From Schmidtea polychroa (Eukaryota), in NCBI GenBank assembly GCA_044892525.1, contig CM097886.1:128588001-128652000 (forward strand): 64,000 bases of DNA. The letters are read 5' to 3'. A program made the translations under genes and the position numbers. The notes under the pieces are model-generated. The model made no database searches. It was not told the origin of the DNA and was given only the letters and a program-made list of their open reading frames with translations. Below are positions 1 to 60,219 of this stretch, in pieces; the stretch's first letter is position 1; each line of letters begins with the position of its first letter.

Positions 1-3000
1 CCACTCTTGTTGTTTCCATTTCCGGATAATTTCACCAAATTGTTCAGGGTACCATACGTACACCCGTCGATATTCTTCAATCGCTTTAACGATTTTTCGT
101 AGGTTTTGAATCCTTTTGCATGATTCGGCTATCCATTTTGCTAGTTCTACCACCGCTCGTCGACGATTTTTCGCCCCGTTTTGTAATATCTCCATCAACT
201 CCTTACATTTTTGTGCTTCCAACAATGTTGCTGCTTCTTCCTCATCTGCGTCGGCGTCTATTGGTAGATGTCCTGAATCAGACACTCTTCTCCTCATCAT
301 ACAGATTCTCGGTTGATTTTCTGGTATGTTCAGTCGTTGGTTCATTTCTTGTTCTGTTTCAACTTCTACTCTGATCTGGATAGCATTGTTTTTCACAAAT
401 TTTGACTGCTCATTCTCAATGTAACTTAGACGTATTAATTTAGGTGTCCCAGAAGCGATATTTTCTGATGTTGTTGGTCGTTGATAGCAGGCGCTCCTTG
501 GATCTGGTTTCAATGTTTCTTTATGCATGTTAAGGCTATCTTTCAATGGTTCGATTGCTATCGTCACTTTTCTGCTAAACGGCCATGGTACCTTGTCGTC
601 ATAATTTCCTTTGCAGATGACGAAGAATGCCGACACATAATTTCCTTTACCTATCCCGTCTCCGTTCGGGTATATTCGCAATTTCATCTTGTACTCACCT
701 AATCCTGAGTAGAACGGTGGACTTACTAATCGTGTGATTTTCTCTTCCTTTGCTGATTTTATCTTTTCCATCCAATTCTCAATTTTCCACGTGAATGGTG
801 CTAACCTTACTGGTTCTCGTATCTCCTCATCTTCTCCTGATGGTAATTCATTTTGGAATTCTTGTGGTAATATATCCTGGTAAGTATCGATCGGTTTCTC
901 TCTTACCCATACTGCTGCGATCTCTTCGGGTATATTATCTATCCAATTTGGTTCCAACTTTTGCTGCTCCCAATCCCATCGAGCTTCACTTTCGATCCAC
1001 ACTTTTTTCCATGGTATCAGTTTGCAATCTTCGTCATTGAAGGCTGCTAGTTTTAGTTTATCATCCTTTAGCCAATGGTTATAAATATCTATTATTCGAT
1101 CCATCTTTGCCCTCATTCCCCATTGGAATCTTTTAATTTGTTGCTCGGTTTTCGTGGCGTTTTTGTGCCCACCAGATGGTTCATCCATCGCGATTATATT
1201 GATGACGGCTCCATCTTCCCAGATTCCTAGTTCGTAAATTACAGTTCGGTCTCCTCTTTCTAGCATGTGCCGGTTGTACATTATTATCACATCTTCGATC
1301 ATTCCATCCTCACTATTTTCTCGAGCTTTTTGGATGATCTCTTGATCTATGATTTGCACTAACTCGTCAACTTGGCAATCGGGATTAACTTCTATTATTT
1401 GTTTCTCTTCATTTGGCAACTTCACCTTTATTTTTATCGTTTCATGCTCGCATTTGGTTCTCTCGTATTCTCCGTATTTAGATATCAATTCTGTCGCTCG
1501 TTTGTCTTCGAATCTCATAATTTCCGTGTCTCGTACGTCTTTAACAAATTGTTTCATTAGTTGTGGCCATCTTTCTCTCAATCTATTAATGTATTTCCTT
1601 GTCTGATCGATAGCTTGTTTGACTAAGATTATTTGGTTTTCTTTCATTATTTTTCGTTCGATCTTTTCCAATTCTGGTTCTACTTCATTGTTAAACACTT
1701 GTTGGATTTTCTTGAACATCTCTGCTACCGAGTCGTCATCCCTGGTTTTCTCTAAGGTTAAGATGTTAGTTTCGTTTGGCCATATCATCGCATCTACCAA
1801 ATGTATGCCTATTTTAACTTTGTAACCATCGACATATAATTGTTTATTTTTATGGCTCGTTCCCATTTTTTCCTGTACCCAGTTGTACAGTTCATCGGTA
1901 TTTGTTCCTTTTAATTCGATAGTCTGTATCTGAATCTCGGGGTGTTGAATGCTTACTTGATATTGATCTGGGCCTGCTTCCTTTAGTTTCTCTTTATATT
2001 TTGTTGCTAAATCTTTCCATGCTGCCGTTATTATACCTCCTTCACACTGGTATACTTGAGTTATAAGTTTTAAGCATTTTCTGTATGTTAACTCGTTGAT
2101 GTAGTTCTCATTTCGCTCTATTTCTGTTACTGTGTCGAGAATTTCCTCGAATATCTCTTCTTCATCTTTTTCTATCATTGATTTCATGTCATCATTTTCA
2201 CTCTCCTCACTACTTTGAGGTGTTTCACTGTTTGGGGGTGTTTTCGGTTCGTTATTTACCTCACTTGACTGAAATAATTCGCCTCCCAGGCTACTCACCT
2301 CACTTTTCTCATCTTCCTGATCCGTCTGATCGCTCCGCATTTGTCTCAGCATGTTTATTTTAGCTTTGGTATGTGGTTCCTTCTTTTCAAACCACTCATT
2401 TTTCCTGAACCAATGCTCTTTCACTTTTTCTTTTATTTGTTCCTCAGTTAATGTAGGATTTTCGTTTTTGATTCTGTCTTCGATTTTTTGTAGTAGTACC
2501 CTCTGAATTCGATTTTTTGTAATTATCTCATTGCTTTTTGGTTCGTCTTTACTCTCATCTCTCTTTTGTCTCCTTTCTTTCTCCTCTTTGGTAAATTCTT
2601 TAATCAATTGTATTTTCTCTTCACTGCTCAATTCTGTTCGTGGATCAATCTCATCTTCTTTTGTCGTTTTTATCTCCTTGTTTATTATCGGTTCACTCCC
2701 GTCGTTGTTAACACACTGCTCCGCAGTGTGCGATTCCTCTTTATTTGTTAATCTCATCATATTTATTCTTCCGGGATTCGCTTCCCGTTGTTTCCATCTT
2801 TCTTGAATTTCTCTGGCTTCCTCGTTTTGTAATCTTTGCCATTCGACTCGTTGCTGATCTTGTTGTTGCTTACTTGGTTGGTTCCGGATTTCCTCGGTGC
2901 TCTGCATCATGTTGATTCGTTGTTGTTGGTTATTAGTCGGTATTCGCAGGATCATATCTTTTAATTGTTCGATTTCCTGCATGAGGTTGATTTGTGTGTT

Positions 3001-4032
3001 CTGAACTGGATTGTTTGATCCTGGTTGATTTGGTTTGGTTCTCATCGTGCATTCTCTTGCCATGTGTCCAGGCTGATTACAATTGTAGCAGGTTCTGGTT
3101 CCTCCTCTGCTCATAGACATCATGGGTCCTCTGCAGACATTTTCCGTGTGGCCTCTTCTCCCACACTTTTGACACATCCTTGCTTTATAACATTCATTGC
3201 TCCAATGCCCTGGTCGTTGGCATATGTTGCACGTTCGATTGTTGATGTCGTTGTTCCTGAAATTATTAGTAAAATTTTGAATATTACCTCCATTGTTTTG
3301 GTTTCTTGTTTGTGGAGTTTTGAACAACTGTTGCGATCCTGGGATGAATTGATTCATTACTGGATTTGCATTATTGACTTGGTTGTTTGTGGTTGTTGCT
3401 GTTGCCGCTGGAGCTGCTGGAGCTGCTGTCATTGCTGCTACTTGTATTGGTGTTAAGTAGGTTTCACATTTGTTAGCGATTTTTAGTGCTTCTTCCAGCG
3501 TCTCTGGTGCTCGGCATCCCAAGGTTGCTCGTATATCCTCTCGTTTCATGCCATCTACGAATACGGCTATTATTTTGTCTTCCGGAACTGGTTGATTTGA
3601 ATCGAAGGCTTCTCGTGCTAGTCGTCTCAATTCGCATGCGTACAGTGCGTTGGATTCGTTATATTTCTGCTTTCGATGCAGAAAGTCTAACATTTTTCGA
3701 TTTCCCTCTTTTTCGGTACCGAATGTTTTTATTAAAAATTCCTTGATCTCTTTCCACGTTCTCAACTTAGTTGCATCACATTTCGCCTCCAAGTATACAT
3801 CTTGGGCGCTTCCCTTTAGATATAGGGGTATTCGTTCTCGTACGACTATGTCTGGCCAGTGACATATCGTAATGTATACTTCGAATTCCTTTATAAACGT
3901 TTCCAGCTGGTTTATATTTCCATCGAATGGCTCTCCTCGAAATTTCTCTCTGAATTCTCCAATGTTGACGTGCACATTACTTGTTTCCGGTGGGTCCGTT
4001 AGCCCTGTTACATTTGGAATTCCGTCTGTCAT
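1..4032 (-). CDS. gag: Gag-cargo polyprotein, 3'-partial (>=1344 aa): capsid-like Gag, 3x CCHC, 2 ubiquitin-like domains, TRAF-type MATH
   Basis: Hand translation shows the frame open from 4341 to 1, with the first ATG at 4032 (MTDGIPNV). Gag core FDGNINQLETFIKEFE...LYLKGSAQDVY...TWKEIKEFLIKTF lies at ~3930-3450. Knuckles CNICQRPGHWSNEC, CQKCGRRGHTENVC and CYNCNQPGHMAREC lie at 3231-3049. MATH PFTWKIENW...VSPPFYSG...YKMKLRIYPNGDGIGKGNYVSAFFVICKGNYDDKVPWPFSRKVTI...FVKNNAIQIRVEV lies at 798-358. Confidence 0.92.
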   Translation of the reverse strand, partial: MTDGIPNVTGLTDPPETSNVHVNIGEFREKFRGEPFDGNINQLETFIKEFEVYITICHWPDIVVRERIPLYLKGSAQDVYLEAKCDATKLRTWKEIKEFLIKTFGTEKEGNRKMLDFLHRKQKYNESNALYACELRRLAREAFDSNQPVPEDKIIAVFVDGMKREDIRATLGCRAPETLEEALKIANKCETYLTPIQVAAMTAAPAAPAATATTTNNQVNNANPVMNQFIPGSQQLFKTPQTRNQNNGGNIQNFTNNFRNNDINNRTCNICQRPGHWSNECYKARMCQKCGRRGHTENVCRGPMMSMSRGGTRTCYNCNQPGHMARECTMRTKPNQPGSNNPVQNTQINLMQEIEQLKDMILRIPTNNQQQRINMMQSTEEIRNQPSKQQQDQQRVEWQRLQNEEAREIQERWKQREANPGRINMMRLTNKEESHTAEQCVNNDGSEPIINKEIKTTKEDEIDPRTELSSEEKIQLIKEFTKEEKERRQKRDESKDEPKSNEIITKNRIQRVLLQKIEDRIKNENPTLTEEQIKEKVKEHWFRKNEWFEKKEPHTKAKINMLRQMRSDQTDQEDEKSEVSSLGGELFQSSEVNNEPKTPPNSETPQSSEESENDDMKSMIEKDEEEIFEEILDTVTEIERNENYINELTYRKCLKLITQVYQCEGGIITAAWKDLATKYKEKLKEAGPDQYQVSIQHPEIQIQTIELKGTNTDELYNWVQEKMGTSHKNKQLYVDGYKVKIGIHLVDAMIWPNETNILTLEKTRDDDSVAEMFKKIQQVFNNEVEPELEKIERKIMKENQIILVKQAIDQTRKYINRLRERWPQLMKQFVKDVRDTEIMRFEDKRATELISKYGEYERTKCEHETIKIKVKLPNEEKQIIEVNPDCQVDELVQIIDQEIIQKARENSEDGMIEDVIIMYNRHMLERGDRTVIYELGIWEDGAVINIIAMDEPSGGHKNATKTEQQIKRFQWGMRAKMDRIIDIYNHWLKDDKLKLAAFNDEDCKLIPWKKVWIESEARWDWEQQKLEPNWIDNIPEEIAAVWVREKPIDTYQDILPQEFQNELPSGEDEEIREPVRLAPFTWKIENWMEKIKSAKEEKITRLVSPPFYSGLGEYKMKLRIYPNGDGIGKGNYVSAFFVICKGNYDDKVPWPFSRKVTIAIEPLKDSLNMHKETLKPDPRSACYQRPTTSENIASGTPKLIRLSYIENEQSKFVKNNAIQIRVEVETEQEMNQRLNIPENQPRICMMRRRVSDSGHLPIDADADEEEAATLLEAQKCKELMEILQNGAKNRRRAVVELAKWIAESCKRIQNLRKIVKAIEEYRRVYVWYPEQFGEIIRKWKQQEW

Positions 4033-5123
4033 TATTTCTTGACACAAAATTGTTATATTGGTTGACTCTGAACTATTTCCTTCCTCGTCTGATGATTCAA
4101 TGTCACTTATCGGATCTAGTTCGGTTCGTTTAAGATCGTCGCTGTTCTCAAATTCGTTTGTTAAACTGTCTGATTCAAATACTGTTTCTACTGATGCTGG
4201 CTTCCTGTGTAGTTTTCTGTTGGTCTTGGCCTTTTGTATCTCTTCCTTTTCCAATAAACTGAGGTTTCCTTTACTTTTTCGCCTCGTTCGGTTAGCTATG
4301 CTATCAATTTTTCCTCCTTTTAATATCCTTTGATAAATTTTCTACTTTGTCAATCGAGCTCGATGTTTTCTAAGTATTTTTCTCGCTTTAATCTTTACGA
4401 TTCTCTAACTCTTCTTGGATTTGGTTTTATTAATTTCCTTGATTCTTCTCTTCTAATTGATTTCTCTATATCTCTTGATTTCTATTGCTTTCTTGATTTC
4501 TTTGATTTCTTTCTGAATTGTTTGCTTTATTCTAGAATAATTAACACCTCTAGTACATATCATAAATTCTCTTTATTAAACCCTTCATTTACTTTCCCTT
4601 TTCCCTTTATTTTACTGTCCCTTCGCTTCAAATTTTCTAGCTTTTCTACACTTCTCGCTATTCGCCCCATTTTGATTTTAAGTTGATTTTAAATTATCTA
4701 TAACTCGTATCAATTATCTATATAGTCGTATCAATTATCTATCCCTTTTATTATTATCATAGAAATATAATATTAATCACATAAATATCAAAATAAACAT
4801 ATCATTAATAAATAAAATTCAATAATTCAACTACTATCTATTCGTTCGCTTTTCCCCATCCAAAAACTGGTTTAATTTTCGCTTGCGCCGGCGCTTTATC
4901 ATAATTCTCCTCTACTCATTACATATTTATCGCACTTAATCTATTTCAGTTTAATCAATTTCATAGTTAATCATTGATGCTTTGGTTCGCGCGACCTCTA
5001 CATCCACCTTTATTTACCATCGGCTCTCTGGCCGGTTTGTTCAACTCCTTTATTTTCATTTAAATCATTTCACTCAATCACCATCGGCTCCTTGGCCGGT
5101 TTAATCAACTCATTTTAATCTCA

Positions 5124-5433
5124 TGAAGTCTTTTACGACTCCTAGACGCCTGGGCTTTTACACCATTACGCCATATAATCTACTATTACCCATCAACGCT
5201 TTGGTTTGTTAGACCTCCGCGTCGGCATCGGCTTCCGGCCGGTTTAATCAAAATTGAAGTCTTTTACGACTCCTAGACGCCTGGGCTTTTACACCATTAC
5301 GCCATATACTCTACTATTACCCATCAACGCTTTGGTTTGTTAGACCTCCGCGTCGGCATCGGCTTCCGGCCGGTTTAATCAAAATTGAAGTCTTTTACGA
5401 CTCCTAGACGCCTGGGCTTTTACACCATTACGC
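5124..5433. repeat. 131 bp tandem repeat (~2.4 copies) in the retroelement leader
   Basis: The unit TGAAGTCTTTTACGACTCC...GGCTTCCGGCCGGTTTAATCAAAAT restarts at 5124, 5255 and 5386, and the copies are nearly identical. Confidence 0.95.
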
Positions 5434-6840
5434 CGTATTCGCGGTCTTCGGTCCCTGACCGGTTTCAAATGCCCTAAATGAGGTTTCTTCAACCCCCAGA
5501 CGCCTTCGGTTTTAACACCTACTATCGTCCCTACCGCGATTAAATTGAGTTGACAGTTGACTTTCGGGCTAATCAAAAATTCGAGGCTCCTCCTACTCCA
5601 ACTCTTAATCTGCTGAGGCCTCACAACTGGCTCAATTCTTGGCCGCTTATTGAAAAGAGTCTAATACCGGTAACTCTAATCTCATCGCCGTTTCACTGGG
5701 CCTATCGGTACTCGGTGTGGGCATCCGGGTTTTGTACCGATCCCTGCTAGCAATAATCACGAAGAAAAAACATCCTATCTATCAGGATTTAAAAAACACG
5801 GAAATGCCTAATCGCCTTGATCGTGATTCTCAAAAGTGATGAACCAGATCTCCCGACTAGTGAAGCTAAAAGGAAATTGGGTATGCAGTTGACTCTCGGT
5901 CTCCCGCCTCACAACTGGTCCAATCTTGGTTGCCTGTTGAGTACGAGTTCTTTACCGGTTGACTCGCATCTCACAACCGTTTCACTGGGCTCCTTGATAC
6001 TCGGTGTAGGTAACTGGGTCTCTCTCGCTCGCTACCCTTCCGGGTTTTTGTATCAAGTCCCGCTAGCAACTCAAAAAGTGCGCCCAATACTCGGTGTGGC
6101 ATCCGGGTTTTTGTATTGGGTGATCCAGCATCATCAGTCCCTTGGCCGATAATCTCCTGGACACTACAGTCCGGTGGTTAGCCGCTGTACTCGGGTGCCT
6201 CATCACTCGCTAGGGAAAATCATTATTCTCATCTGATTTGAAGTCCAAAAACGGTTTCTTCAAATCCGCAGCTGCTCTCGGATTAAATTTTTAACATTTA
6301 GCGCGCGTTTTTCAATTTTTATTTTATTTTTCTATTTTTATTCACCCTTTTAGTTAGTCCCCGTCTCCCAGACAAAAAAATATAATAATCGCGTTGGTTC
6401 GTTTCCCACAAGTGGTGATCAGTCACTGGACAGAAACTCCCCAACATTTGCGATGGATCCTACTACATTCTCTCATCAGGGTGATCAGGATTTCCCCATC
6501 CGGGCAAGTGTCGTAAGGACGATTCACTTGTCATCCCCTCATTATCGTATCTCTTTATGCCAAAATAACAAACAGGAAGAAAAGAAAATTGGAAATAAAA
6601 ATCGTACTGATCTTAGCGATCAGCTCATTCATACGACTATGATCAGTCCTGCATTCAACTTTGATTTTAGTTCTAATTGCTGTGTTGCTTGTCTATTTAT
6701 TTAACGTATTTTGTGTCCTTTATATGTCTATGTTCATCGTATGTTTTACACCTTTCGGTTGCTATAATGGATTTTTAATATAATTTACTAATTTTATCAC
6801 TTCATATTCATTCACAAGAAATTTATTTGACAACATCTCC

Positions 6841-7323
6841 TTATGGGAGGTATATTACAATTTTCTCTCTAACATTCGTATCGCATACGTTGCATCGTTT
6901 AATTTTCTCTACGCAATTCTCGCAGTAGCATAAATGACCACATGGAATCGTCATTACTCGTATTTCATTGGTTCTGCATATGAAGCATTTTCTAAAATCT
7001 TTAACTTGATGTTCGATTGCTTCTTTAATTTCTTCCTCGATCGTTTCCATTTTTATCATTATCTCCTGCCATTTGATGTTAAATTTGGCATTGTCTAATC
7101 GTAAATTTTGAAGTTGATAAACTCTTTTAGTGGTCAATTCTGCATTAGGTGTCGCTATTTTCATCATTACGCATATTTCCTCAGCTTGCGGTCTTGGATT
7201 CAAGCTCATCTCATCTTGGATTTTTATCAACTGGTCCGCTTTGCGATTTAGCCGTTGTAACGAATTGTGTGTTAAATCTACGAATTTTTCGAGTCTCTTT
7301 GTAATGTAGCCGGTTGATTCCAT
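6841..7323 (-). CDS. Coiled-coil plus C-terminal IAP/MDM2-type C3HC4 RING protein (putative E3 ligase), 160 aa
   Basis: The C-terminus CFICRTNEIRVMTIPCGHLCYCENCVEKIKRCNVCDTNVREKIVIYLP matches the terminal RING pattern of IAPs, including the hydrophobic tail. ATG start, TAA stop, same strand as gag. No BIR domain seen. Confidence 0.88.
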   Translation of the reverse strand: MESTGYITKRLEKFVDLTHNSLQRLNRKADQLIKIQDEMSLNPRPQAEEICVMMKIATPNAELTTKRVYQLQNLRLDNAKFNIKWQEIMIKMETIEEEIKEAIEHQVKDFRKCFICRTNEIRVMTIPCGHLCYCENCVEKIKRCNVCDTNVREKIVIYLP

Positions 7324-8019
7324 CTAATTAAGATTTATTAATTAAAGTTCTCTTTTTATTAATATTCCGCGTCATTTTCCCCCTTTATCGTTTTCCCCCT
7401 AGTATCCAGAATACCTTATTTTATTAGTGCTTCGATAAACCTTTACATTCTACTTATTACCCTTAACAACCCCGTCTCCCTCTGTTTAATGCTTTATTCC
7501 GCGCAAATTTCTTTCATGATCTTGTGATTTTATTACAATCGTTTTAATTATATATAACCCATATCCCATTCCTTATCGCCATATTTTACACGTTTTCTGA
7601 TTAAGTTTAATTTCATGGTTCATTTGTTCTATCTTTATTAGCGTGCTATCCCCCCTTTTCCCTATTTTTAAATTTTTATTATTTCCTTATATTTACATTT
7701 TATTAATCGTTGATATTTACAATTTTATTATAATTTGTTTTCGTTTTAATTTTCGTTTATCCTCATTCATTCTATTACTGAGTTATTCGTACAGCATTCT
7801 CATACTCACTTTCAATACATCCATATGTCGTCATACTTTAAAACTTCCATCACTCATTTAAACATTTCACATACATTTTATCATATTCACATATCCATGT
7901 ACTAAGTTTAAGGGTTTGGGAAAACAATTTGCTCAATCTTGAATGCATATTACTTTATATCAGCTTTTACTCTCTCCATTATATCTATTCTCGGGTTCTT
8001 TCACCAATTAAATTTGCAA

Positions 8020-8037
8020 ATCCCGGCTGAGCCCCCA
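8020..8037 (-). promoter_or_regulatory. Primer-binding site, tRNA-Pro
   Basis: Minus strand reads TGGGGGCTCAGCCGGGAT versus the canonical Pro PBS TGGGGGCTCGTCCGGGAT (16/18). It lies 4 nt from the LTR-terminal CA. Confidence 0.9.
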
Positions 8038-8443
8038 AATTTGTATGGTGGGTTACTGGTGGTTGAATGATTGAGTGCTGTTACCAGCGTAACCCAAAAT
8101 ACAACATTGTTTTTCCGCTTGGTACCCGTTGAGTGATCAACGTTGGTACTGTACCAAGGGTTGAGTACTCGCAAAAAGTGAGCGCATCAAAGCACTATAG
8201 TTGTCGAGTACTCCGTGGGTTCACGGACTACCGATAGAAGGTGTGTGTCCGATTTCTCAGGTCCCTTTATCAAAATTGTTTTCCCAACCTTATGCACAAA
8301 CTCTCATTTCCCAGGCAATCATAAACTGTACTAGTCATTATTTTATCACTACAAAACGTGCAGTATTTTAACAAGGAACATATTATTTGAAGACTACCAC
8401 AATACATAAAAATACTACAAAACACCTAAAACCGAATATAAGT

Positions 8444-8902
8444 TCAAACAGGCTTATTGGTAGGACTGGCCAATTTCGTCGCAGCTGCTAGTGACAAATT
8501 TGCTTGTCGCTCGTATTCGGCCAGTCTAGCTTTCTTCAATTTTTCCCGAATATTTCGGCCTAACCGCTTTCTTTTGGGTTTCTCTTTCGCGGCCGGGGGG
8601 TATATTGCTGCTAGTTCCACGGTCAACGGCCGGATTTGGCTTATGGCGGCTCCGTGAACTACTTGTTCATTTCGCTCGGTTTCTAGCGCGCGGAGCTGGA
8701 GCTTCAGTGCCCGGATCTCCATCTGATCCTGCGCGGCTTGAGTCTGCAGTTGAAGGACCTGCGCCACCTTCCTTTTCATATCCTCGGGACTAAACCAGGT
8801 GCTTTCTAGTTCCCGGCACCGTCCCTTGAGCTTGTCTACTCGTATGCGGAGCTCCTCGGACTGTTTTTGAGCTTCTGCCCTATCTCTTCGCAGATTTTCC
8901 AT
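8444..8902 (-). CDS. LTR-encoded coiled-coil protein with TWFSP motif and basic NLS-like tail (ORF-B)
   Basis: GC-rich ORF, ATG at 8902 (the track starts at GTG 8914). LESTWFSPEDMKRKVAQVLQLQ and PKRKRLGR align with YEGTWFSPPQMKEERSKVLRLE and RKRKRLTR in ORF 48191-48952. Confidence 0.8.
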   Translation of the reverse strand: MENLRRDRAEAQKQSEELRIRVDKLKGRCRELESTWFSPEDMKRKVAQVLQLQTQAAQDQMEIRALKLQLRALETERNEQVVHGAAISQIRPLTVELAAIYPPAAKEKPKRKRLGRNIREKLKKARLAEYERQANLSLAAATKLASPTNKPV

Positions 8903-9124
8903 TAGTCTGAACACTAGATAAATTCAGCGATTATATTCTTGCAGCATACTATTCATTCAATTATAAAATAAAATCAATATTATAAATAAACATAGTTTCG
9001 GATGTTAAGCACGCAATACACAAGATGATTTATTAAAAGGACTGAAATAATTATCACTAAAATCAAAGTTTAATAAAATCGCAACTGAATGTTAATTTGC
9101 AAAAAACAAAATTTTGACGATGAG

Positions 9125-9490
9125 TCAGTTCAGTCGCTTGCGAGGCCTTCCCCTCTTCCGCGGGGTTGCCTCGGCCTCTTCTAGGTCCTCCACGGTTTTT
9201 CCCTCTTTTTCTGCTTGGATTTGTAGCTCGATCTTCTTGAGTCGCATCTGAGCTGCTTCTACCTCGATGGCCGCTCGGTCGCGGGCCTCTTGCAAAAAAT
9301 CGTTTGTGGGCTCTGTTTTTACCCACGCCGGAGCGTCCGGCTCCGGCCCACTCCTGATTACTGGGCCAAAGTTGTCGAGGTCCAAACCCCGATTCCAATC
9401 ATGGATACGGTGCCATATGTACCGTGTACGGAGTCTGGTAAGCATCTGTCGGTCGGCTTCTTCGTGGCTATCGCTGTCAGAGTAGGACAT
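9125..9490 (-). CDS. LTR-encoded 121 aa protein with C-terminal AT-hook (ORF-A)
   Basis: GC-rich ORF in an AT-rich context with a helical middle, ending TPRKRGRPRKRLN (AT-hook core RGRP). Confidence 0.72.
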   Translation of the reverse strand: MSYSDSDSHEEADRQMLTRLRTRYIWHRIHDWNRGLDLDNFGPVIRSGPEPDAPAWVKTEPTNDFLQEARDRAAIEVEAAQMRLKKIELQIQAEKEGKTVEDLEEAEATPRKRGRPRKRLN

Positions 9491-9991
9491 TTCTACAAAA
9501 TAATAATCAAGCCCCTCTATACTGATTGAGATACGACGTCAACCACAAGATTTTGTTGACCCTTTTTCCCTTTAAAAAAAAAATATTTTATTTTAAGACT
9601 ACCATCTATAAGTTTAGGAGCAGTGGAATAAGATTTCCTACTTTATCAAAACAAACACACAAAAAAATTTTCGTCAAAATTCGTTTGTTTAAATTAATCA
9701 TTTCCATTCAAAATTTTGTTTACCACTGAGTAGTAATTTTAATTACTATTTATAAATTTTAATTTACATATTAATAAAATGTGAATTTTTTCCTTTTTGA
9801 TCGTCATTCTTAGGCCACTAAATTCGGGCACGCTGGGGCGACAGGTACTAGCAACGAACTAAGCTCTTCGTCTGCTTACCTTTCCTTCGGTTGTGCTCGT
9901 TATGAGTGGTTTGCTCTGCATACAAGTAATTTATTTAATTTGCTAATTTCTAAATTTCCAGGTGATCGATATCGGATTGGGATATCGATTT

Positions 9992-10360
9992 TTTGTAGTT
10001 AACCGTAATAATACCAATAATAATAACAATGAAATAACGATACTAATAATAATAATAATAATGATAATAATAATATTAATAATAGCAATGATAGTAATAA
10101 TAATAAGAATAATAATAAATTTTAATAATGGTAATAATAATAATACTAATAATAGTAATAACAAGAATAATAATAAATTTTTATAATGGTACTGATAATG
10201 ATGATAATAATAATAATGCTAATTATGATATTCATAATAATGATAATAATAATATAATAATAATAAGAATAACAATACTAATAGTAATGACAATGTTGAT
10301 ACTGCTAATAGTAATAACAAGGGAAATGATCAGGATTATGATAACTATAATTTTATAATC
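9992..10360. repeat. Degenerate (AAT)n microsatellite inside the LTR
   Basis: Long interrupted AAT/GAT run; it accounts for the poly-N/poly-I spurious ORFs. Confidence 0.9.
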
Positions 10361-12570
10361 CCATGTTTTAGAATTATAAATTCATGTTTTATAATTTATA
10401 CTTTGATAATTTTCGATTTATAATTTAAAATTTTTCCATTTAGGGATTTACAATCTTGTAATTTATAATTAATTTCATATTTTGAAATTTATACATTCAT
10501 ATTTTATAAGTTATAATTGCTTAACTTATAATTTATAAGTTTATAATCTAAAATTTATACTTTTGTAATTCGTATTTTCATACTTTATAATTTGAAATTT
10601 TTAGTCGACGGAATATACTTCTTACAACTTCCTTCTATGATCAACATTGTTTTCCGCAGTACTTACAGATTTCCTGGTCCTATTTGTGGATTAAACTTCA
10701 GGGTTCTAGCGCGTCTATCGCCTATCTGTAACCAATCCTAAGTTGATTTTTATACGAAAATTGTTTACTACTATCTCTGATCAGACTTTCTCCATTAACA
10801 ATTTACATTTTCAGGATCGACGTGGTTTGTACCTAGCTATCGTAATTATTTATAACTTATAGTTTTATAGTTAACAACAAGAACATTACAACTAAGAGCC
10901 TACACATTTACAAACATTTTAAAGTGGGAGCTAGATTTAAAATGTCTATCTTTACTCGGAATCAACATATCTAGATCAAGTTATACCTGTACGTATGCCG
11001 AATATCTCTCTTTTTTCTATTACTTTATCAAAGATCCTTACTACAAAACCTAGTTCGGCATATGTCTAAGTATAATTGAAATTACCATTATGAATCAACT
11101 AGCTACATTAATGTGAGTGTAGAATTGTGTAATTTTAGGTACGAGCTCTACTCAAATTAGAACCTTAGTGTAGAGTTATTGTTCAGGATTTTAAGTGTTG
11201 AGTTTAATTGTATATTACGCAATGAGTCGGGAAGAATATTGCTTTCATGGCCTCACTGTGACCACGTCCACAAACCTTAGTGTTGTGTGCTAAGTCAACC
11301 ATTTACGGCTGACCTTAAATAAATACGAAGAGTCAGGCGGAGGGTTTCCTCGACCTAACTCCATGGCAGGACCATGAAGTAGTTCGACCTCCGGCTGACC
11401 CGAACAAAAGGAAATCATATAATAAATATCACTATAATAACGATAATGCGTGTCTGCATGTCTTGTTAATAACGATTTTAATAAATTGGATGCAGGACTG
11501 AACAACGACGCAGGAATACCAGTACGCCGTTGATCACTCATACATCGCAAAAAAAAATTTTAAGCAAAAATAAATTTAAAATACCATCTATATAATTAAA
11601 CAATTAATATACAAATAAAGATCAATGCTTACTATCGATTTTGGAAATTTTGTCACAAAAATTTGGCATAAAAGTGATTGATTGTGACTGAAACGTGTCA
11701 GTATATATACCTATTTAGTACACGTGTATGTATTGATGCATTAAAACAAACTCGAATTCTTTTTATTCCAGAATTTTCTATTTAGCGATTTTGCTATTTT
11801 TAATGACAATTTTTGTGCCATAATTTTTGTTTTTATTTTTATATTTTTATTTTTTAATTATTTTTCGTTAATTTGCCGTCCATGATGGATTTGGAACGGT
11901 TCCAGAACATTCTATTTTATTTTTAATTTAATTTTTATTTTAACTGATGTTTTGTGAATTTCTTTTAAAGATTTATTATTTTTAATACTAATTTATTTAT
12001 TTTCCTTAACTTTTGTTGTTCTAGATAACTTTTGTGATGGTCATCGCCATTTTTATAGAATGTTCTGGGTTTTTCTGGAATGTTTTACTGTTTTTATCGT
12101 CTTTTAAGTTATTCGAGTCTGTTTTTTGTAACCCTGTGTTTATTTGGTTATTTTTGAGTTAGATTTTTGCATCACTTCTTGCTTTTGTATAATTTTGTTT
12201 AATTTCTTTGTTTATGTTTTTGTTGCTTTCTCCTTTAGTTAATATTGTTTATTTGGTGTAGGTTTTAATATTTAACTATACTTGGTGCTTTTTTACTTGC
12301 TGTGTACCTACGCGTTTCAGTCACAATTAGTATTTTGGGTCTAGAAATCAGTTCTAGCCCAACATAAATTAAAAATGAAAATTATATGGAGAAATTTTGA
12401 AATTGAGTTTTAACAAGAAAGGCTGGTGAAAAACTGGGCCGCATGAGCCTGCTATGCGGTGGCTTGTAATTTCTAGTTTTGCCACTCACAAGAAACCTTT
12501 CCTGCTTGGTTCCCATCCCAATTGCTGATTCCCATAGAATTGAAATCTTCTAAATGTTAAGATTATTTAA

Positions 12571-12787
12571 CACTAGATTTACGGGTAATATTCGCTGTAA
12601 AAATAGGTATGCCTAATTCGATATGCGAAATGAGGGAAGCGGTAGAGGAGAGTAATTAATATTTACCTATATTTCATGACATATCTAAAAACCAACATAT
12701 GCATTCAAAAAATAATAAATCAGTATTATATATATGTAGCAATAGAATTTTAAATGAGTCAGATTGGCTCAGTCCGTAAATCTAGTG
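12571..12787. mobile_element. piggyBac-type MITE
   Basis: 14 bp TIR CACTAGATTTACGG at both ends, flanked by TTAA. Confidence 0.85.
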
Positions 12788-12799
12788 TTAAATAAATAA

Positions 12800-13556
12800 A
12801 TACCTCACCTTGCGTTGCTTCCGTTTGCGTAGCATTTTTGCAGAACGAATTATGGATTCAAAGTTAGGTAATAGAGTATGTCCGAATTTTGTTAGGCTAT
12901 TGTATAAGAAGATCTTGAAGTTTTTATTGACTGATATGGATGCAGAACTCTTTGAAAATCTCTCAGTTCATGGAGTGTATAATTTTGGTAAACTAAATAG
13001 AGACAAAAGATATATGTAGAAAAACATAGTGAAGTTGAATGTAAAACTCCTTATGAACCAGTACCAAGCGTTTCGTATAAAGAAGCGTTTTTGATTTTGT
13101 GGTGAGCAAATATTGTGCGAATAATTCTTCAAAACCTCTACATTCAGAACTGACCCTTTGTTGAATGTTGAAAATAAATTTTTCAATTGTCTTTTTATTT
13201 CCCATTTCGTAACAACTCGTTCTTTTTCAAAGTAGTGCAAGCATCATCCAATAAATGGTTAATGTTTATACTTTAACTGCCAATGCTTACGCATTTTTGG
13301 ATTTTCCATTTCGTATCAGTTGAAATATTGTCACTATATTCACTATAACTTTGACGTCTATTTTGTTGTAGATATCTTTTCACTTATTGATAGAAACTAC
13401 TTGCTGTGATTTCTCTCTTTGGTCTTTTTATTAAGAGTTTACTCTTGATGTTGTAAATAATCTCTTTTTCCTACGATTTCTCTCAACTGGTTTTGTGTTT
13501 TTCATTTTTGTCAATTATGTCTGGGTTCTTTAATTTGCCTTTTCATCATTATTGTT
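12800..13556 (-). pseudogene. Possible decayed Helitron Rep N-terminal region
   Basis: A K/R-rich stretch is followed by frameshifted SIGS..., LHYFEKE and NGK segments resembling the Helitron IGxM..C..C.ALHFxxE...CCxNGK zinc motif. Heavily degraded. Confidence 0.35.
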
Positions 13557-13755
13557 GCCGCTTAGGTCCATGGGAAAATGAAATGTAATATCTTTGTAAA
13601 TATTATAATCTGATAGAGCTCGACCATTTTCTGACTATTTGACAAGAGAAATTAGACATTGTTGATTTGAGGGATCCGATTTTATTTTTTACATTTTCAA
13701 TTACTACTTCCAGTGTTATTGTTTTCTTTGTTAGTATTTTGATAAATATTGGCAA
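13557..13755 (-). pseudogene. Degenerate ubiquitin
   Basis: IFIKILTKKTITLEVVIENVKNKI, then after a frameshift QQCLISLVK*SENGRALSDYNIYKDITFH..LSG. This is collinear with ubiquitin (IFVKTLTGKTITLEV...[30 protein letters not shown]), with two small deletions and a stop. Confidence 0.85.
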
Positions 13756-14617
13756 ATCTCTTTTTCCATTTGTACTATTTTTCGTAAGTGCCTTCAGAAA
13801 ATCCCTTAAAACAACCATTATTACCAATAATATCACATCTATCACAGGAATTTGCTTTTTGTTTATTATTTTTCTTTATTTACATGTATTTTATTGTAAG
13901 TTACCACAGCTGGAATTTTTACTCAAATTGATTGGTTTGTCTGTGAAATAGGATTTTAACAATTATCGATCTGACTCCAAGTGTGTTTAATAACAACAGT
14001 AATCAACTATAATCAGAAGAGGGACAATCCAAATTTGAACCCTAGACAGGGAAAGAAATTTACGCCCTTTCAAAGAAAACTGTATATATTAATAAATCAA
14101 TCAGATTTTTACAGGAAATAATAAATCCATGATTTTTTAATAATATTTTTATTGAAAATAACAACAAATATATTACAAATTAATTTTCCTTATTAAAAAT
14201 TATAATAAATCATAAAATATCTAATTTGAAAATTTCAGAAAAATTTATTAAAAAAATAATTGTTTCTGCGCTTTTTGAGATACATTGCGCCCTAGACAGG
14301 AGGAGCCCTCGTACTGCGCTGACTACAATAATGCATTAAAATTTATTATTTGAATTTAAACAAACAATTATATAAAATAAAAATGACATAATAATGGCAT
14401 CAATTTTAATCGTTTTTGGTGAATTTATCTTGTTTTTTTTCTTCTATTTTTCTTGGGTGCCTAGTATAATTGAGATGGGGGTAAAGAAATCAACAGCCGT
14501 TGGGCTACAATATAAATATTAATAATTATTATTGGAAATCGGTTATAATTAAAATTGGATCTATTCGCAATCTAAATATCAAATCTGATAAAAATGATAA
14601 ATTAAAAAGAAAAATAT

Positions 14618-17995: not shown

Positions 17996-19272
17996 AAAAT
18001 GAAAGGAAGGAAGGAAGAAGCATTATCAAGTTTCAAAAGAGTTTGAACAGGCGCAATGTTGACCAATCAAATTTTATCCTACAAACATCAAACATGAGAA
18101 TTATCTTATTGTAAAGCAAAAATTAATAATAAAAATTTTAAATTATTTAAATAATTAATTTAATTTAAACAATTATAATAATAATCGACTAAATTAATGT
18201 GTCCAGTTTTAACTGGAAATGAAAAATAAAATTGGTAAAATAATTATTATTATAAATATTTTATTAATCTGGGATCCAAATCATTATTATAAATATGTTT
18301 AAGGTTGACAGACTCGTGTAAATTATGATCTGATAAGCTTAGTGGGATCGCAATCCACCGCAAACGGTCATCTTTATTTGGAGTTAAATTTAAATGTTTT
18401 CTCATAGCAATAACTTCTGGATCCTCATTAAGGTTCTTGGTGCTTTCATCGTTAGATGTGTCCATCAAATTGATTCTAGGAGTTTCAATAACCAACGATT
18501 GACTGACAAAATAGCCAGGATTTTTATCATTGACATTAGATCTTGCATTTCTATATAATTCATTGACCATTTTATACCATCCGTTACTCGCACTAATCTC
18601 TCGGATTTGTTCTTCACTGTGTCCCGATTTCCTCATTTTCTGTTGAATTAGTTCATTACTATCCTTATCGGAAGGGTGTAAATCTTCATACAATTCTTCA
18701 ATGTAAAAATAATTTGGAATTCGTTTGGGAGTTTTAGTGTTTTTTAATTTCAAATGGGAACTTACCGCAATTGGAACTTTTTCTTTGAATTTTCTGGCTT
18801 TTATTACTAAATTTTTAATTTTAGGTTTTATACAATTGTTATTCGAATTATCTGATAATTTCTTTGATCTTTGCAGTGAAATGATTTTAGTACTGGCCTC
18901 ATTCATGAAATGTTCTGGAGCCTTATCTTTTACATTTTCATTCCAACTTTTATTACTACTACTTGTGGATATTATTTCAGGTGTTTTATTGAAATTATTT
19001 ATATTTAATATTTTAATCGGTTGACCAGGTCTCGGTTTGGCTGCATAAACTTGTTGAAAATTATGTTTTTTAATCAAGGGGAGACCAAATGCGGGTCTGT
19101 AACATGAATTTAGGGGATGAAAATTAATGTTAAAGCCCAATTGATTTTTGTTAATTAAAATAGTTTCAGTAAGCATTTTAATTTTTAAAATTTTCAAATA
19201 ATTGTACAAAATTGATGCAAAAAATTAATATATTAATTTTATTAAATTTTGATTGGTTTAAAAGAATTTTAA
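17996..19272 (-). repeat. Left arm of ~1.28 kb inverted duplication
   Basis: Reverse complement of 25122-26398; paired coordinates sum to 44394. Confidence 0.95.
18250..19209 (-). CDS. Orphan 319 aa basic protein, copy 1 (TTG at 19209; shared ATG at 19176)
   Basis: A long intact intronless ORF in very AT-rich DNA; differs from copy 2 by two residues plus the start codon. No domain recognised. Confidence 0.65.
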   Translation of the reverse strand: MYNYLKILKIKMLTETILINKNQLGFNINFHPLNSCYRPAFGLPLIKKHNFQQVYAAKPRPGQPIKILNINNFNKTPEIISTSSSNKSWNENVKDKAPEHFMNEASTKIISLQRSKKLSDNSNNNCIKPKIKNLVIKARKFKEKVPIAVSSHLKLKNTKTPKRIPNYFYIEELYEDLHPSDKDSNELIQQKMRKSGHSEEQIREISASNGWYKMVNELYRNARSNVNDKNPGYFVSQSLVIETPRINLMDTSNDESTKNLNEDPEVIAMRKHLNLTPNKDDRLRWIAIPLSLSDHNLHESVNLKHIYNNDLDPRLIKYL

Positions 19273-19849
19273 AATTTTTTCAATTAATATTTTTAAAATT
19301 TAAAATAAAAACTCTAGATAAAAGATTTATTTATTATCAATTTTAAAAATTTTGTTGTCATATAATTATAAATTATATTGCTGACTACCAAAGCTTTCCC
19401 TAACAATATTGGTTCCAATTTGATGCCCTCCTCTGCCAGTTTTCAGTTTCACTAATGTCATATTAATTTAAAAATAATTATTTTCTCATTGTTCGTCACT
19501 TTACCTTTACTTTATTGTTCTCATTATTTTTAAATTATTACATATTTTACAATTAAATAAATCTATCAATATAGATTTTAAAATTTTTTTTATAAATATT
19601 CAATAATAATGATTACATTTTATTTTTAAAAATTAATCAATTAATAAATTGATAATTTATAAAATCATATTTTCTCTAAAAATGGAATGCGATTGGGCGA
19701 ACCAATCAAGCTCGTATCGCGATGAATCTGAATTTCGAATATTTATTAAAATGTATATAATATATTAATACTCTGCTCTCTTCTTTTTTGAAAATATTAA
19801 AAGTGCTACATGTCTAACGCGGGAAACTTTCCGGGACAATTTTAAGAAG

Positions 19850-24420: not shown

Positions 24421-25121
24421 AATAATAATAATAATAATGAATAATTCTTTGATAAAATAAATGTTAAAATATTAAAATTTAAAAAACTATCATTTATTAA
24501 TAAATATACGAAAAATTTTTTTTTACAACTTTCAATTTTTCATTTATACATGTAAAAAACTAAACAGAATTTTTATTTTAAATTTATCCTAAATAATAAG
24601 TGTTTTTATTAAAATTACTTTTTCTTTCTGAACTCCTTGTTTTTAAAACAAGCACTAATAATTAAGAAATTTGAATAAACTAATATAAATTTTTTTATCA
24701 AAGTTAAACAAACAATGTTCAAGAAAATTAAAAAAACATATATGCGTTCAGCATAGATTTCATTTATTCATTCAACCAATCAAGTCCGGCCCGGGGTCGG
24801 CAGTTCAGTCTATCGTTTGGGGCGCTAGATTTTGTAGGACTCCGTGATACTCCAAAAAAGCGCAATGATGACTTCAAATTATCAAACAATGTTGTTAAAA
24901 AGTATAACCTAAGTCCTGAATACAACATACTTATTTTCTATCTATCATTATTTGAAATATGAAAATTATACTTTTAACCTTCTATGAAAGCATTAAAATA
25001 TTTTCTTCTAAATTAATTTTTCATCACTTTAAATTTAATGCAATTAATTTTCATTTAAAATTTTTAAGATTTAATATTTTTAAATTTAAAATATCAAAAT
25101 TTAAAGTTTGAAAATATTTAT

Positions 25122-59611: not shown

Positions 59612-59757
59612 NNNNNNNNNNNNNNNNNNNNNNNNNNNNNNNNNNNNNNNNNNNNNNNNNNNNNNNNNNNNNNNNNNNNNNNNNNNNNNNNNNNNNNNNN
59701 NNNNNNNNNNNNNNNNNNNNNNNNNNNNNNNNNNNNNNNNNNNNNNNNNNNNNNNNN
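59612..59757. other. Assembly gap (N run)
   Basis: Direct reading. Confidence 1.
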
Positions 59758-60035: not shown

Positions 60036-60219
60036 NNNNNNNNNNNNNNNNNNNNNNNNNNNNNNNNNNNNNNNNNNNNNNNNNNNNNNNNNNNNNNNNN
60101 NNNNNNNNNNNNNNNNNNNNNNNNNNNNNNNNNNNNNNNNNNNNNNNNNNNNNNNNNNNNNNNNNNNNNNNNNNNNNNNNNNNNNNNNNNNNNNNNNNNN
60201 NNNNNNNNNNNNNNNNNNN
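60036..60219. other. Assembly gap (N run)
   Basis: Direct reading. Confidence 1.

What the first reader, a model, noticed from the sequence alone, without database searches (positions are those of the whole stretch)
358..1962. Retrotransposon Gag polyprotein carrying a TRAF-type MATH domain and two ubiquitin-like domains
The minus frame is uninterrupted from 4341 to the window edge; the ORF track misses it because there is no stop. After Gag and three CCHC knuckles, where a protease normally follows, there is >1000 aa of extra sequence. It contains two beta-grasp-like segments, YQVSIQHP..IQTIELKGTNTDELYNWVQEKMG...QLYVDGYKV...NILTL (1962-1753) and TIKIKVKLPNEEKQIIEVNPDCQVDELVQII...IMYNRHMLE...ELGIWEDGAVINII (1440-1192), separated by a helical stretch. 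A TRAF-C/MATH domain with the hallmark YPNGDG.GKG..VS.F and W-P-F motifs follows (798-358). TRAF MATH domains bind receptor tails and adaptors in TNFR/TLR signalling (established). A retroelement making such a module in-frame with its capsid could recruit or jam host immune/death signalling or ubiquitin machinery (inference). Giant 'Burro' Gypsy elements are known from planarians, so the literature must be checked, but I know of no description of a Gag-Ubl-Ubl-MATH fusion.
Basis: partly seen in the sequence, partly recalled or inferred. Interest (0 to 1): 0.93.

Follow-up and report, generated by a model that had tools for sequence, protein, structure and literature searches.

The report
Known giant planarian retroelement: Gag-Ubl-Ubl-MATH
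This is the front end of a giant 'Burro'-type Gypsy retroelement whose capsid (Gag) polyprotein runs in one frame into two ubiquitin-like domains and a TRAF-type MATH domain; the sequence observation holds, but the Gag-MATH fusion has been in the literature since 2007-2019, so it is not a discovery.

Summary
The minus-strand frame 4341->1 is open for all 1447 codons. It encodes a Gag-like region, three CCHC knuckles, about 360 aa of charged spacer, a probable β-grasp domain (Ubl1), a helical linker, a well-supported ubiquitin-like domain (Ubl2), a Trp-rich spacer and a TRAF-C/MATH domain (Pfam E 4e-30; human TRAF3 E 4e-31). The frame then runs off the window still open.

The claim of novelty does not hold. 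Burro1/GYPSM1 of Schmidtea mediterranea is described as a 4,873-aa ORF1 starting with Gag plus three CCHC knuckles and carrying MATH_TRAF_C, a SUMO-like motif, BCL2-like, BIR, ankyrin, Env-like, PR, dUTPase, RT, RH and IN (PMC6431247, citing Jurka 2007 and Grohme 2018). Meddling with host apoptosis and ubiquitination was already proposed there.

Three details appear in no text I could read:
- the two Ubl domains upstream of MATH, which are the best-conserved cargo among relatives;
- an I-N/C-M-M/L motif recurring four times in linkers, possibly protease sites;
- a separate IAP-type RING ORF about 2.5 kb upstream of gag.

Pol and the LTRs lie outside the window, so element membership rests on architecture, not on pol.

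The parts
1..4341 (-). 5' part of the element's ORF1 polyprotein. It is open for 1447 codons and still open at the window edge, with 0 stops and 0 detectable frameshifts inside the window.
4030..4032 (-). First ATG of the frame (residue 104). The ~100 codons upstream are still similar to the predicted N-termini of relatives, so the true start is unresolved.
3442..3963 (-). Gag capsid-like region (aa ~127-300).
   Evidence: Most invariant columns of the 8-sequence alignment lie here. Relatives pass the Pfam thresholds for Retrotrans_gag or PNMA. There is a weak, non-significant hit to the dArc2 capsid.
3046..3237 (-). Three CCHC zinc knuckles (nucleocapsid-like), aa 369-432.
   Evidence: zf-CCHC E 1.5e-11; the sequence
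1963..3045 (-). Charged, partly helical spacer (aa 433-793). It holds three of the four I-N-M-M/L motifs, at aa 476, 526 and 662.
   Evidence: no PDB or Pfam domain
1747..1962 (-). Ubl1: probable β-grasp domain (aa 794-865).
   Evidence: 46-54% identical in three relatives
1441..1746 (-). Long helical linker (aa 866-967).
1186..1440 (-). Ubl2: ubiquitin-like β-grasp domain (aa 968-1052).
   Evidence: 49-60% identical in two relatives
799..1185 (-). Trp-rich spacer with no recognised domain (aa 1053-1181).
352..798 (-). TRAF-C type MATH domain (aa 1182-1330).
289..351 (-). Linker after MATH that holds the fourth motif (aa 1346).
1..288 (-). Helical region that runs off the window (aa 1352-1447). 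It is 53% identical in P0008.
6841..7323 (-). Separate 160-aa ORF: a coiled-coil-like N-terminus followed by a C-terminal IAP-type RING. It is probably an accessory ORF of the same element.
   Evidence: zf-C3HC4_3 E 1e-11. The best PDB matches are the cIAP2, cIAP1 and XIAP RINGs, E 3e-9. It is 31% identical over 150 aa (E 6e-29) to the N-terminus of P0001, where it precedes a homologous gag.
4342..6840 (-). Non-coding stretch between the RING ORF and gag. It contains a 131-nt tandem repeat (5124-5438) and a G+C-rich segment with repeated hairpin-like units.

Best explanation
Window 1 to about 7323 (minus strand) is the 5' part of a Burro-type giant Ty3/Gypsy LTR retroelement of a dugesiid planarian. 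It may extend to about 9950. An upstream accessory ORF encodes an IAP-type RING. About 2.5 kb downstream, the giant ORF1 polyprotein begins. Its order is: Gag capsid-like region, three CCHC knuckles, a charged spacer, Ubl1, a helical linker, Ubl2, a Trp-rich spacer, TRAF-C MATH and a helical region. ORF1 then continues beyond the window edge.

Shown: the domain identities and their order, and the same Ubl1-Ubl2-MATH-tail arrangement in a 51%-identical relative.

Inferred:
(a) MATH is a host TRAF-C domain taken up without the TRAF RING, zinc fingers or coiled coil, so it can bind but cannot signal. It keeps 5 of the 8 TRAF2-type peptide-contact residues. Most likely it acts as a decoy or adaptor for host proteins that carry TRAF-binding motifs, with shifted specificity. 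This fits the element's other published cargo that resembles apoptosis regulators (BIR, RING, BCL2-like).
(b) The two Ubl domains are integral, non-conjugatable β-grasp interaction modules. They belong to the older core of this lineage, because they are present where MATH is absent.
(c) The four I-N/C-M-M/L motifs in linkers are candidate sites for the element's protease. Cleavage there would release a product of about 680 aa containing Ubl1, Ubl2 and MATH.
For: - Open frame of 1447 codons.
- Gag homology and three CCHC knuckles.
- MATH at Pfam E 4e-30 and TRAF3 TRAF-C at E 4e-31. The closest unnamed representatives are TRAF-like proteins, 41-45% identical over MATH only.
- Ubl2 fold. Weak support for Ubl1.
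- P0008 shares the whole module at 51% identity. P0005 shares Gag, Ubl1 and Ubl2 but has no MATH there.
- Identity by segment is highest in Ubl1, Ubl2 and MATH. In the most distant relative it drops in the linkers: 46-49% in the Ubls against 24-33% in the flanks.
- Contact residues: the TRAF2 list comes from PMC1334386 and was mapped through the TRAF3 alignment. The Arg, Tyr, Asp, the first Ser of the triplet and the Ser467 equivalent are kept. Phe->Leu, Ser->Ala and Ser->Cys are changed.
- Motif: 4 occurrences against at most 1 in 20,000 shuffles, conserved at equivalent places in P0004, P0005 and P0008.
- RING ORF homologous to the N-terminus of a relative's RING-gag protein and to IAP RINGs.
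- The literature description of Burro1/GYPSM1 matches this architecture (PMC6431247). A function for the Burro1 B-IAP cargo is reported second-hand (PMC13465017).
Against: - No PR, RT, RH, IN or LTR is visible, because the window ends at codon 1447, and no second LTR copy exists in the window.
- No reference Burro sequence was available, so family membership rests on architecture and on a published description.
- No database protein exceeds 51% identity, so this may be a different Burro family or species from the one described.
- Pfam Retrotrans_gag does not hit the window protein itself at E<=1.
- Ubl1 is not significant by any single test.
- Three of the eight TRAF contact residues differ, and four differ in P0008, so binding of classical TRAF motifs is not assured.
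- There is no TRAF-N coiled coil next to MATH, so trimer avidity may be missing.
- The protease-site reading of the motif has no direct support.
Confidence: 0.8

Rival explanations
1. The identity is the same (a Burro-type element), but the cargo serves the element's own particle assembly or trafficking and does not jam host signalling. In this reading the Ubl domains and MATH dock Gag-linked products to the host ubiquitin, proteasome or sorting machinery, or to each other.
For: The Ubl pair is conserved even in the relative that lacks MATH at this position. The TRAF contact residues have partly diverged: 3 of 8 differ here and 4 of 8 in P0008. The module sits directly after Gag-NC, so it would be made in Gag-like amounts. 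Dependence of retroviral Gag on ubiquitin and sorting machinery is established knowledge.
Against: The other published Burro cargo (BIR, RING, BCL2-like) points to control of cell death. The MATH domain is clearly of TRAF1/2/3/5 type and keeps the Arg, Tyr and Asp that hold the acidic residues of TRAF-binding motifs.
Confidence: 0.3
2. A domesticated gag-derived host gene (of the PNMA or Arc kind) that acquired Ubl and MATH domains, and not part of a mobile element.
For: No pol or LTR is visible in the window. Relatives score on the Pfam PNMA model.
Against: The frame is still open at the window edge after 1447 codons. The RING-then-gag arrangement recurs in a diverged relative. Several diverged paralogues exist. 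The architecture matches the published Burro ORF1. The 4.3 kb of coding sequence has no introns, although the neighbouring RFX gene is split into exons.
Confidence: 0.06
3. The Ubl-Ubl-MATH stretch is a recent, copy-specific capture or an assembly chimera, carried neutrally by this one copy.
For: Only one database protein shares the full module.
Against: That protein (P0008) is only 51% identical, yet it is collinear over all 690 aa, including the spacers and the tail. The arrangement is therefore old and maintained. The folded domains are more conserved than the linkers. There is no stop in 1447 codons.
Confidence: 0.04

Closest known systems
[quoted passage not shown] 2018; Arkhipova & Yushenova 2019, PMC6431247)
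   Same: Gag with three CCHC knuckles sits at the N-terminus of a giant single ORF. MATH_TRAF_C lies in frame downstream. There is a charged, coiled ('Smc'-like) stretch between them. The genome is AT-rich. Accessory ORFs lie upstream.
   Different: I could not compare nucleotides with the reference. Pol, Env-like, BCL2-like, BIR and the LTRs lie outside the window. The accessible text names one SUMO-like motif downstream of MATH. It mentions neither the two Ubl domains upstream of MATH nor the upstream IAP-type RING ORF.
TRAF-C domains of TRAF3, TRAF5, TRAF2 and TRAF1 (e.g. PDB 1rf3, 4gjh, 1ca4, 5h10)
   Same: A full-length TRAF-C match (E 4e-31 to 4e-26). Five of the eight TRAF2-type peptide-contact residues are identical.
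   Different: There is no TRAF RING, no TRAF zinc fingers and no adjoining TRAF-N coiled coil. The Ser triplet reads Ser-Ala-Cys and the Phe447 equivalent is Leu. The domain is embedded in a retroelement polyprotein.
Burro-like element of Dugesia (Girardia) tigrina (PMC6431247)
   Same: A giant Gag-first ORF1. Cargo moves between ORF1 and accessory ORFs.
   Different: [quoted passage not shown] Here MATH is inside ORF1 and Gag has three knuckles. The relative P0005 (three knuckles, Ubl1 and Ubl2, no MATH at this place) is an intermediate pattern.
Ubiquitin or Ubl inserts in viral polyproteins and viral ubiquitins (cytopathic pestivirus polyproteins, baculovirus v-ubi), returned as structural hits
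   Same: A β-grasp domain carried inside, or encoded by, a virus-like genome.
   Different: Those are near-exact host ubiquitin with a C-terminal Gly-Gly that host enzymes use. Here the sequences are highly diverged, and no Gly-Gly is conserved among relatives.
USP7/HAUSP (MATH plus several Ubl domains)
   Same: MATH and Ubl domains occur in one polypeptide. Ubl2 has a sub-threshold, full-length match to the Pfam UCH_UBL1 model (E 0.063).
   Different: The order is reversed and there is no protease domain. The MATH domain here is of TRAF1/2/3/5 type, whereas the USP7 MATH lacks those contact residues (PMC1334386). The resemblance is in the kinds of domain only.

Membership tests
Burro-type giant Ty3/Gypsy LTR retroelement | A typical Gag followed by CCHC knuckles (three in S. 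mediterranea) at the N-terminus of ORF1 | tested here: met
   description in PMC6431247
Burro-type giant Ty3/Gypsy LTR retroelement | MATH_TRAF_C encoded in frame inside the same ORF1 | tested here: met
Burro-type giant Ty3/Gypsy LTR retroelement | ORF1 continues into PR-(dUTPase)-RT-RH-IN of Gypsy type | not testable with these tools
   The window ends at codon 1447 with the frame still open. No contig of a relative could be fetched.
Burro-type giant Ty3/Gypsy LTR retroelement | Long terminal repeats flanking the element | tested here: inconclusive
   Only the 5' side can lie in the window. No repeat of the 4342-10000 region occurs elsewhere in the window. A composition break at about 9.5-10.0 kb is only suggestive.
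Burro-type giant Ty3/Gypsy LTR retroelement | Nucleotide similarity to the Burro1-4/GYPSM1 reference sequences | not testable with these tools
   No repeat library or planarian genome is held. The best protein relative is 51% identical.
TRAF protein family | TRAF-C (MATH) domain | tested here: met
TRAF protein family | N-terminal RING and TRAF-type zinc fingers in the same protein | tested here: not met
   Pfam finds no zf-TRAF or RING in the 1447 aa. The only RING is on a separate ORF and is of IAP type.
TRAF protein family | TRAF-N coiled coil directly upstream of TRAF-C | tested here: not met
   The PDB alignments begin at the TRAF-C boundary and leave the chains' coiled-coil residues unmatched. 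The segment upstream is a Trp-rich spacer with mixed predicted structure (low confidence).
TRAF protein family | The eight TRAF2-type peptide-contact residues conserved in TRAF1, 2, 3 and 5 | tested here: inconclusive
   Five of eight are identical and three are substituted. The mapping goes through the TRAF3 alignment and the residue list in PMC1334386.
Ubiquitin-like (β-grasp) domains | β-grasp fold | tested here: met
   Ubl2. The tool does not print which part of the query aligned. I infer Ubl2 from the confidence profile and the aligned length of 85-93 columns.
Ubiquitin-like (β-grasp) domains | β-grasp fold of the first segment (Ubl1) | tested here: inconclusive
   The secondary-structure order is consistent in two models, but pLDDT is 33-54. 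The ubiquitin-variant hit has E 0.42. No similarity to Ubl2 was found.
Ubiquitin-like (β-grasp) domains | A C-terminal Gly-Gly that would make it a conjugatable or DUB-cleavable modifier | tested here: not met
   A Gly-Gly follows Ubl2 in the window copy only. It is absent at that place in P0008 and P0005. None follows Ubl1.
IAP family (for the upstream RING ORF) | C-terminal C3HC4 RING of IAP type | tested here: met
IAP family (for the upstream RING ORF) | At least one BIR domain in the same protein | tested here: not met
   The 160-aa ORF has no BIR. No BIR-like Cys/His signature occurs in any frame of window 1-14000.

The most novel reading that the evidence does not exclude
The Ubl1-linker-Ubl2-spacer-MATH stretch may be cut out of the polyprotein at the recurring I-N/C-M-M/L motifs. 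That would make a discrete host-mimic protein of about 680 aa, produced in Gag-like amounts. On this reading the two so far unannotated Ubl domains are an ancient core module of the Burro lineage, to which a host TRAF-C domain was later added in some branches. This would annotate part of the 'unknown half' of ORF1 and give a processing map for a giant retroelement polyprotein.
Probability: 0.3. Interest if true: 0.5.

Novelty: already known. Interest (0 to 1): 0.28.

Why it matters
The headline, a retroelement Gag polyprotein carrying a TRAF-type MATH domain, is a published feature of planarian Burro elements, so this finding should not be treated as a discovery. The second look adds three things:
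- an independent confirmation from raw sequence that the cargo is intact in this copy;
- a domain map for about 1000 aa that the accessible literature leaves largely unannotated (two β-grasp domains, linkers, a recurring linker motif);
- the observation that the Ubl pair is more widely conserved among relatives than MATH.

These details could guide annotation of Burro ORF1 and help interpret recent work on mutualism between Burro cargo and its host.

Tried and rejected
- Fetching DNA context of relatives failed. The window's RING ORF, P0005 and P0008 are not on record in the contig index. One metagenome scan found nothing. The relatives are UniParc-only entries without names.
- A second and a third homolog search found nothing (Ubl region; G+C-rich ORF 8444-8914). 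The alignments for structure prediction therefore stayed at 4 sequences.
- The 700-aa AF2 model was poor (mean pLDDT 42) and I did not use it for fold search.
- Ubl1 and Ubl2 show no mutual similarity by BLASTP or hhalign. I rejected a recent internal duplication.
- No PDB or Pfam domain was found in the post-knuckle spacer or in the post-MATH tail.
- No Rfam family and no tRNA gene was found in the window. The leader fold has z = -1.75, which is not compelling.
- No second copy or LTR-like repeat of the element exists in the window. I did not define the 5' LTR or the primer-binding site.
- No BIR signature occurs in the first 14 kb.
- Grohme 2018 and Lee 2026 are not held, so what I say about them is second-hand.
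- I considered an intron joining the RING ORF to gag. No tool predicts one, so I built and tested no splice model.
None of those letters went into a tool call, a note or a conclusion. The mapping in this report uses only the TRAF3 alignment printed and the residue list quoted.
Full report
**1. The observation**

The reverse complement of window 1-4341 translates into 1447 codons without a stop. The window has 31.6% G+C, so a chance ORF of this length is out of the question. The ORF lister misses it only because it runs off the window edge. The frame is closed just upstream of 4341, and the first ATG is at 4030-4032. The roughly 100 codons before that ATG still resemble the predicted N-termini of relatives, so the true start is unresolved. 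Inside the window, ORF1 shows no stops and no detectable frameshifts.

**2. Domains**

- Knuckles and MATH: Pfam finds CCHC knuckles (E 1.5e-11), and the sequence shows three, at aa 371-431. Pfam also finds a MATH domain at aa 1183-1327 (MATH_2 E 4e-30; TRAF-mep_MATH E 2e-27).
- MATH type: against solved structures, the best matches are the TRAF-C domains of TRAF3 (E 4e-31), TRAF5, TRAF2 and TRAF1. TRAF4 and TRAF6 are weaker, and meprin is marginal.
- Gag: the capsid-like part does not reach Pfam thresholds in the window protein itself. It aligns at 47-51% identity with proteins that do pass Retrotrans_gag or PNMA.
- No other domain: no TRAF zinc finger, RING or other domain is found in the 1447 aa.

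**3. The two 'β-grasp' segments**

A 700-aa AF2 model was poor (mean pLDDT 42). A 271-aa crop, window:1171-1983:-, gave pLDDT 80-87 for the first half of Ubl2 and 66-80 for the rest, with a ββαβ(α)β order.

Foldseek against the PDB returned only ubiquitin-like folds in the top 50: ubiquitin variants, SUMO1, NEDD8, ISG15 and the ubiquilin Ubl, with target TM 0.70-0.77 and E about 1e-4. The viral library gave viral ubiquitins and the ubiquitin inserts of pestivirus polyproteins. The tool does not print which part of the query aligned. From the confidence profile and the 85-93 aligned columns I infer that it was Ubl2. The sub-threshold Pfam hits of Ubl2 are mostly β-grasp families (OTU1_UBXL 0.006, UCH_UBL1 0.063, PI3K_rbd, UBX), with two unrelated weak hits alongside.

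Ubl1 has the same predicted order of elements in both models, but at pLDDT 33-54. Its only PDB sequence hits at E<10 are two chains of one ubiquitin variant, aligned in register over 68 residues at E 0.42. I call Ubl1 probable, not shown. The two segments are not detectably similar to each other. A Gly-Gly follows Ubl2 in this copy only, not in relatives. These are therefore integral Ubl domains, not conjugatable modifiers.

**4. Relatives**

An exhaustive search of 1.84 billion representatives found one protein, P0008 (882 aa), that is collinear with the whole Ubl1-Ubl2-MATH-tail stretch at 51% identity. All the other hits match MATH only: multi-MATH proteins and TRAF-like proteins, the latter 41-45% identical.

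P0005 (1497 aa) shares Gag, three knuckles, Ubl1 and Ubl2 but has unrelated sequence where MATH lies. P0004 shares Gag and Ubl1.

| Segment | P0008 | P0005 | P0004 |
|---|---|---|---|
| Ubl1 | 54% | 46% | 54% |
| Ubl2 | 60% | 49% | not aligned |
| MATH | 51% | 14% (not homologous) | not aligned |
| Helical linker | 50% | 25% | 18% |

(All.) The Ubl pair is thus the most widely conserved cargo, and MATH is a lineage-specific addition. All these relatives are unnamed UniParc entries without contigs on record, so I could not see their pol.

**5. MATH details**

PMC1334386 lists eight peptide-contact residues of TRAF2 that are conserved in TRAF1, 2, 3 and 5. I mapped them onto the TRAF3 alignment by their spacing. 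The window protein keeps the Arg, Tyr and Asp, the first Ser of the triplet and the Ser467 equivalent. It has Leu for Phe447, and Ala and Cys for the other two Ser. P0008 keeps four of the eight. The PDB alignments start at the TRAF-C boundary, so there is no adjoining TRAF-N coiled coil. This is an isolated TRAF-C domain, not a TRAF protein.

**6. Surroundings**

A 160-aa ORF at 6841-7323 on the same strand ends in an IAP-type RING (Pfam E 1e-11). Its best PDB matches are the cIAP2, cIAP1 and XIAP RINGs (E 3e-9). It is 31% identical over 150 aa (E 6e-29) to the N-terminus of P0001, where it directly precedes a gag homologous to the window's. RING-then-gag is therefore a conserved arrangement, and the RING ORF most likely belongs to the element.

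Between it and gag lie about 2.5 kb of non-coding sequence, with a 131-nt tandem repeat (5124-5438) and a G+C-rich segment with repeated hairpin-like units. Two further G+C-rich ORFs (8444-8914 and 9125-9490) have no relatives or domains. No part of 1-10000 recurs elsewhere in the window, so the 5' LTR could not be delimited. A host RFX gene lies at about 38-41 kb.

**7. A recurring motif**

The motif I-N/C-M-M/L followed by Arg or Gln occurs four times, at aa 476, 526, 662 and 1346. In 20,000 shuffles it never occurred more than once. It recurs at equivalent places in P0004, P0005 and P0008. All four lie outside the recognised domains, and for the fourth the 700-aa model (low confidence) predicts coil. 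My reading, which is inference only, is that these are sites for the element's protease. The last two would then bracket a product of about 680 aa containing Ubl1, Ubl2 and MATH.

**8. What is known**

PMC6431247 states the following:
- Burro elements of Schmidtea mediterranea exceed 30 kb.
- Burro1 equals Repbase GYPSM1 (Jurka 2007), in which MATH_TRAF_C, Smc, AIR1, BIR and ankyrin motifs were already noted. These motifs and a BCL2-like motif also occur in Burro-2 to -4 (Grohme 2018).
- The 4,873-aa ORF1 starts with a typical Gag and three CCHC knuckles.
- A SUMO-like motif lies between MATH and BCL2.
- A Dugesia tigrina relative has MATH in an upstream accessory ORF.
- The cargo suggests meddling with host apoptosis and ubiquitination.

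PMC8532177 shows that BURRO1 is abundant, expressed and under PIWI control. PMC13465017 cites Lee et al. 2026, which I could not read, for a Burro1 RING+BIR region that protects stem cells from caspase-mediated apoptosis. The Gag-MATH fusion and its proposed meaning are therefore published. In the texts I could read, the two Ubl domains upstream of MATH, the linker motif and the upstream RING ORF are not described.

**9. Verdict**

- Identity as the 5' part of a Burro-type element: about 0.8-0.85. Pol, the LTRs and a nucleotide comparison are missing.
- Mechanism (inference): the TRAF-C domain most likely acts as a non-signalling binder of host proteins bearing TRAF motifs, and the Ubl domains as interaction modules. 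A rival reading is that they serve particle assembly or trafficking.
- Novelty: already known. Interest is low to moderate, because of the added domain map.

Noticed in passing
window 6841-7323 (-): A separate 160-aa ORF with a C-terminal IAP-type RING (closest to the cIAP2, cIAP1 and XIAP RINGs) lies about 2.5 kb upstream of gag. It is homologous to the N-terminus of relative P0001, where it precedes gag in one predicted protein. It is in the same reading frame as gag.
   Followed up: partly
window 2902-2916, 2752-2766, 2344-2358, 292-306 (-): A short motif, I-N/C-M-M/L followed by R or Q, recurs four times outside the recognised domains of the polyprotein. No shuffle out of 20,000 reached four. 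It is conserved at equivalent places in relatives and may mark protease cleavage sites.
   Followed up: partly
window 5124-5438 and about 5600-6250 (-): The stretch between the RING ORF and gag holds 2.4 copies of a 131-nt tandem repeat (98% identical) and a G+C-rich segment (about 46%). In that segment a hairpin-like unit with an ACAAAA(A)CCCGGA loop recurs three times. There is no Rfam match, and the fold z-score is only -1.75.
   Followed up: partly
window 8444-8914 (-) and 9125-9490 (-): Two G+C-rich ORFs (44-48% G+C) of 156 and 121 aa look coiled-coil-like, and the second ends in an AT-hook-like basic run. They have no Pfam hit and no homologue. It is unclear whether they are accessory ORFs or LTR content of the element, or something else.
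   Followed up: partly
window about 9500-10600: G+C falls sharply to about 23%, with a (TAA)n microsatellite at 10006-10288 and further AT-rich short repeats. This may be the outer 5' limit of the element.
   Followed up: no
window 18104-19273 and 25121-26290: An inverted duplication of 1170 nt at 97% identity, with the arms 5.8 kb apart. Each arm carries a 319-aa ORF with no Pfam hit. A further 80-nt direct repeat lies inside the interval, at 22102 and 24341.
   Followed up: no
window 38380-39276 (+) and 40566-41192 (+): Two exons of a host RFX-family transcription factor gene: the RFX DNA-binding domain (E 6e-29) and the RFX BCD domain (E 5e-74). They show that the element sits in ordinary gene-bearing host DNA.
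   Followed up: no
proteins P0001-P0003 (relatives, not in the window): These predicted proteins each contain two successive gag-knuckle units. This could be tandem elements fused by gene prediction or a real duplication.
   Followed up: no
window 59612-59757 and 60036-60219: Two runs of N (assembly gaps or masked sequence).
   Followed up: no
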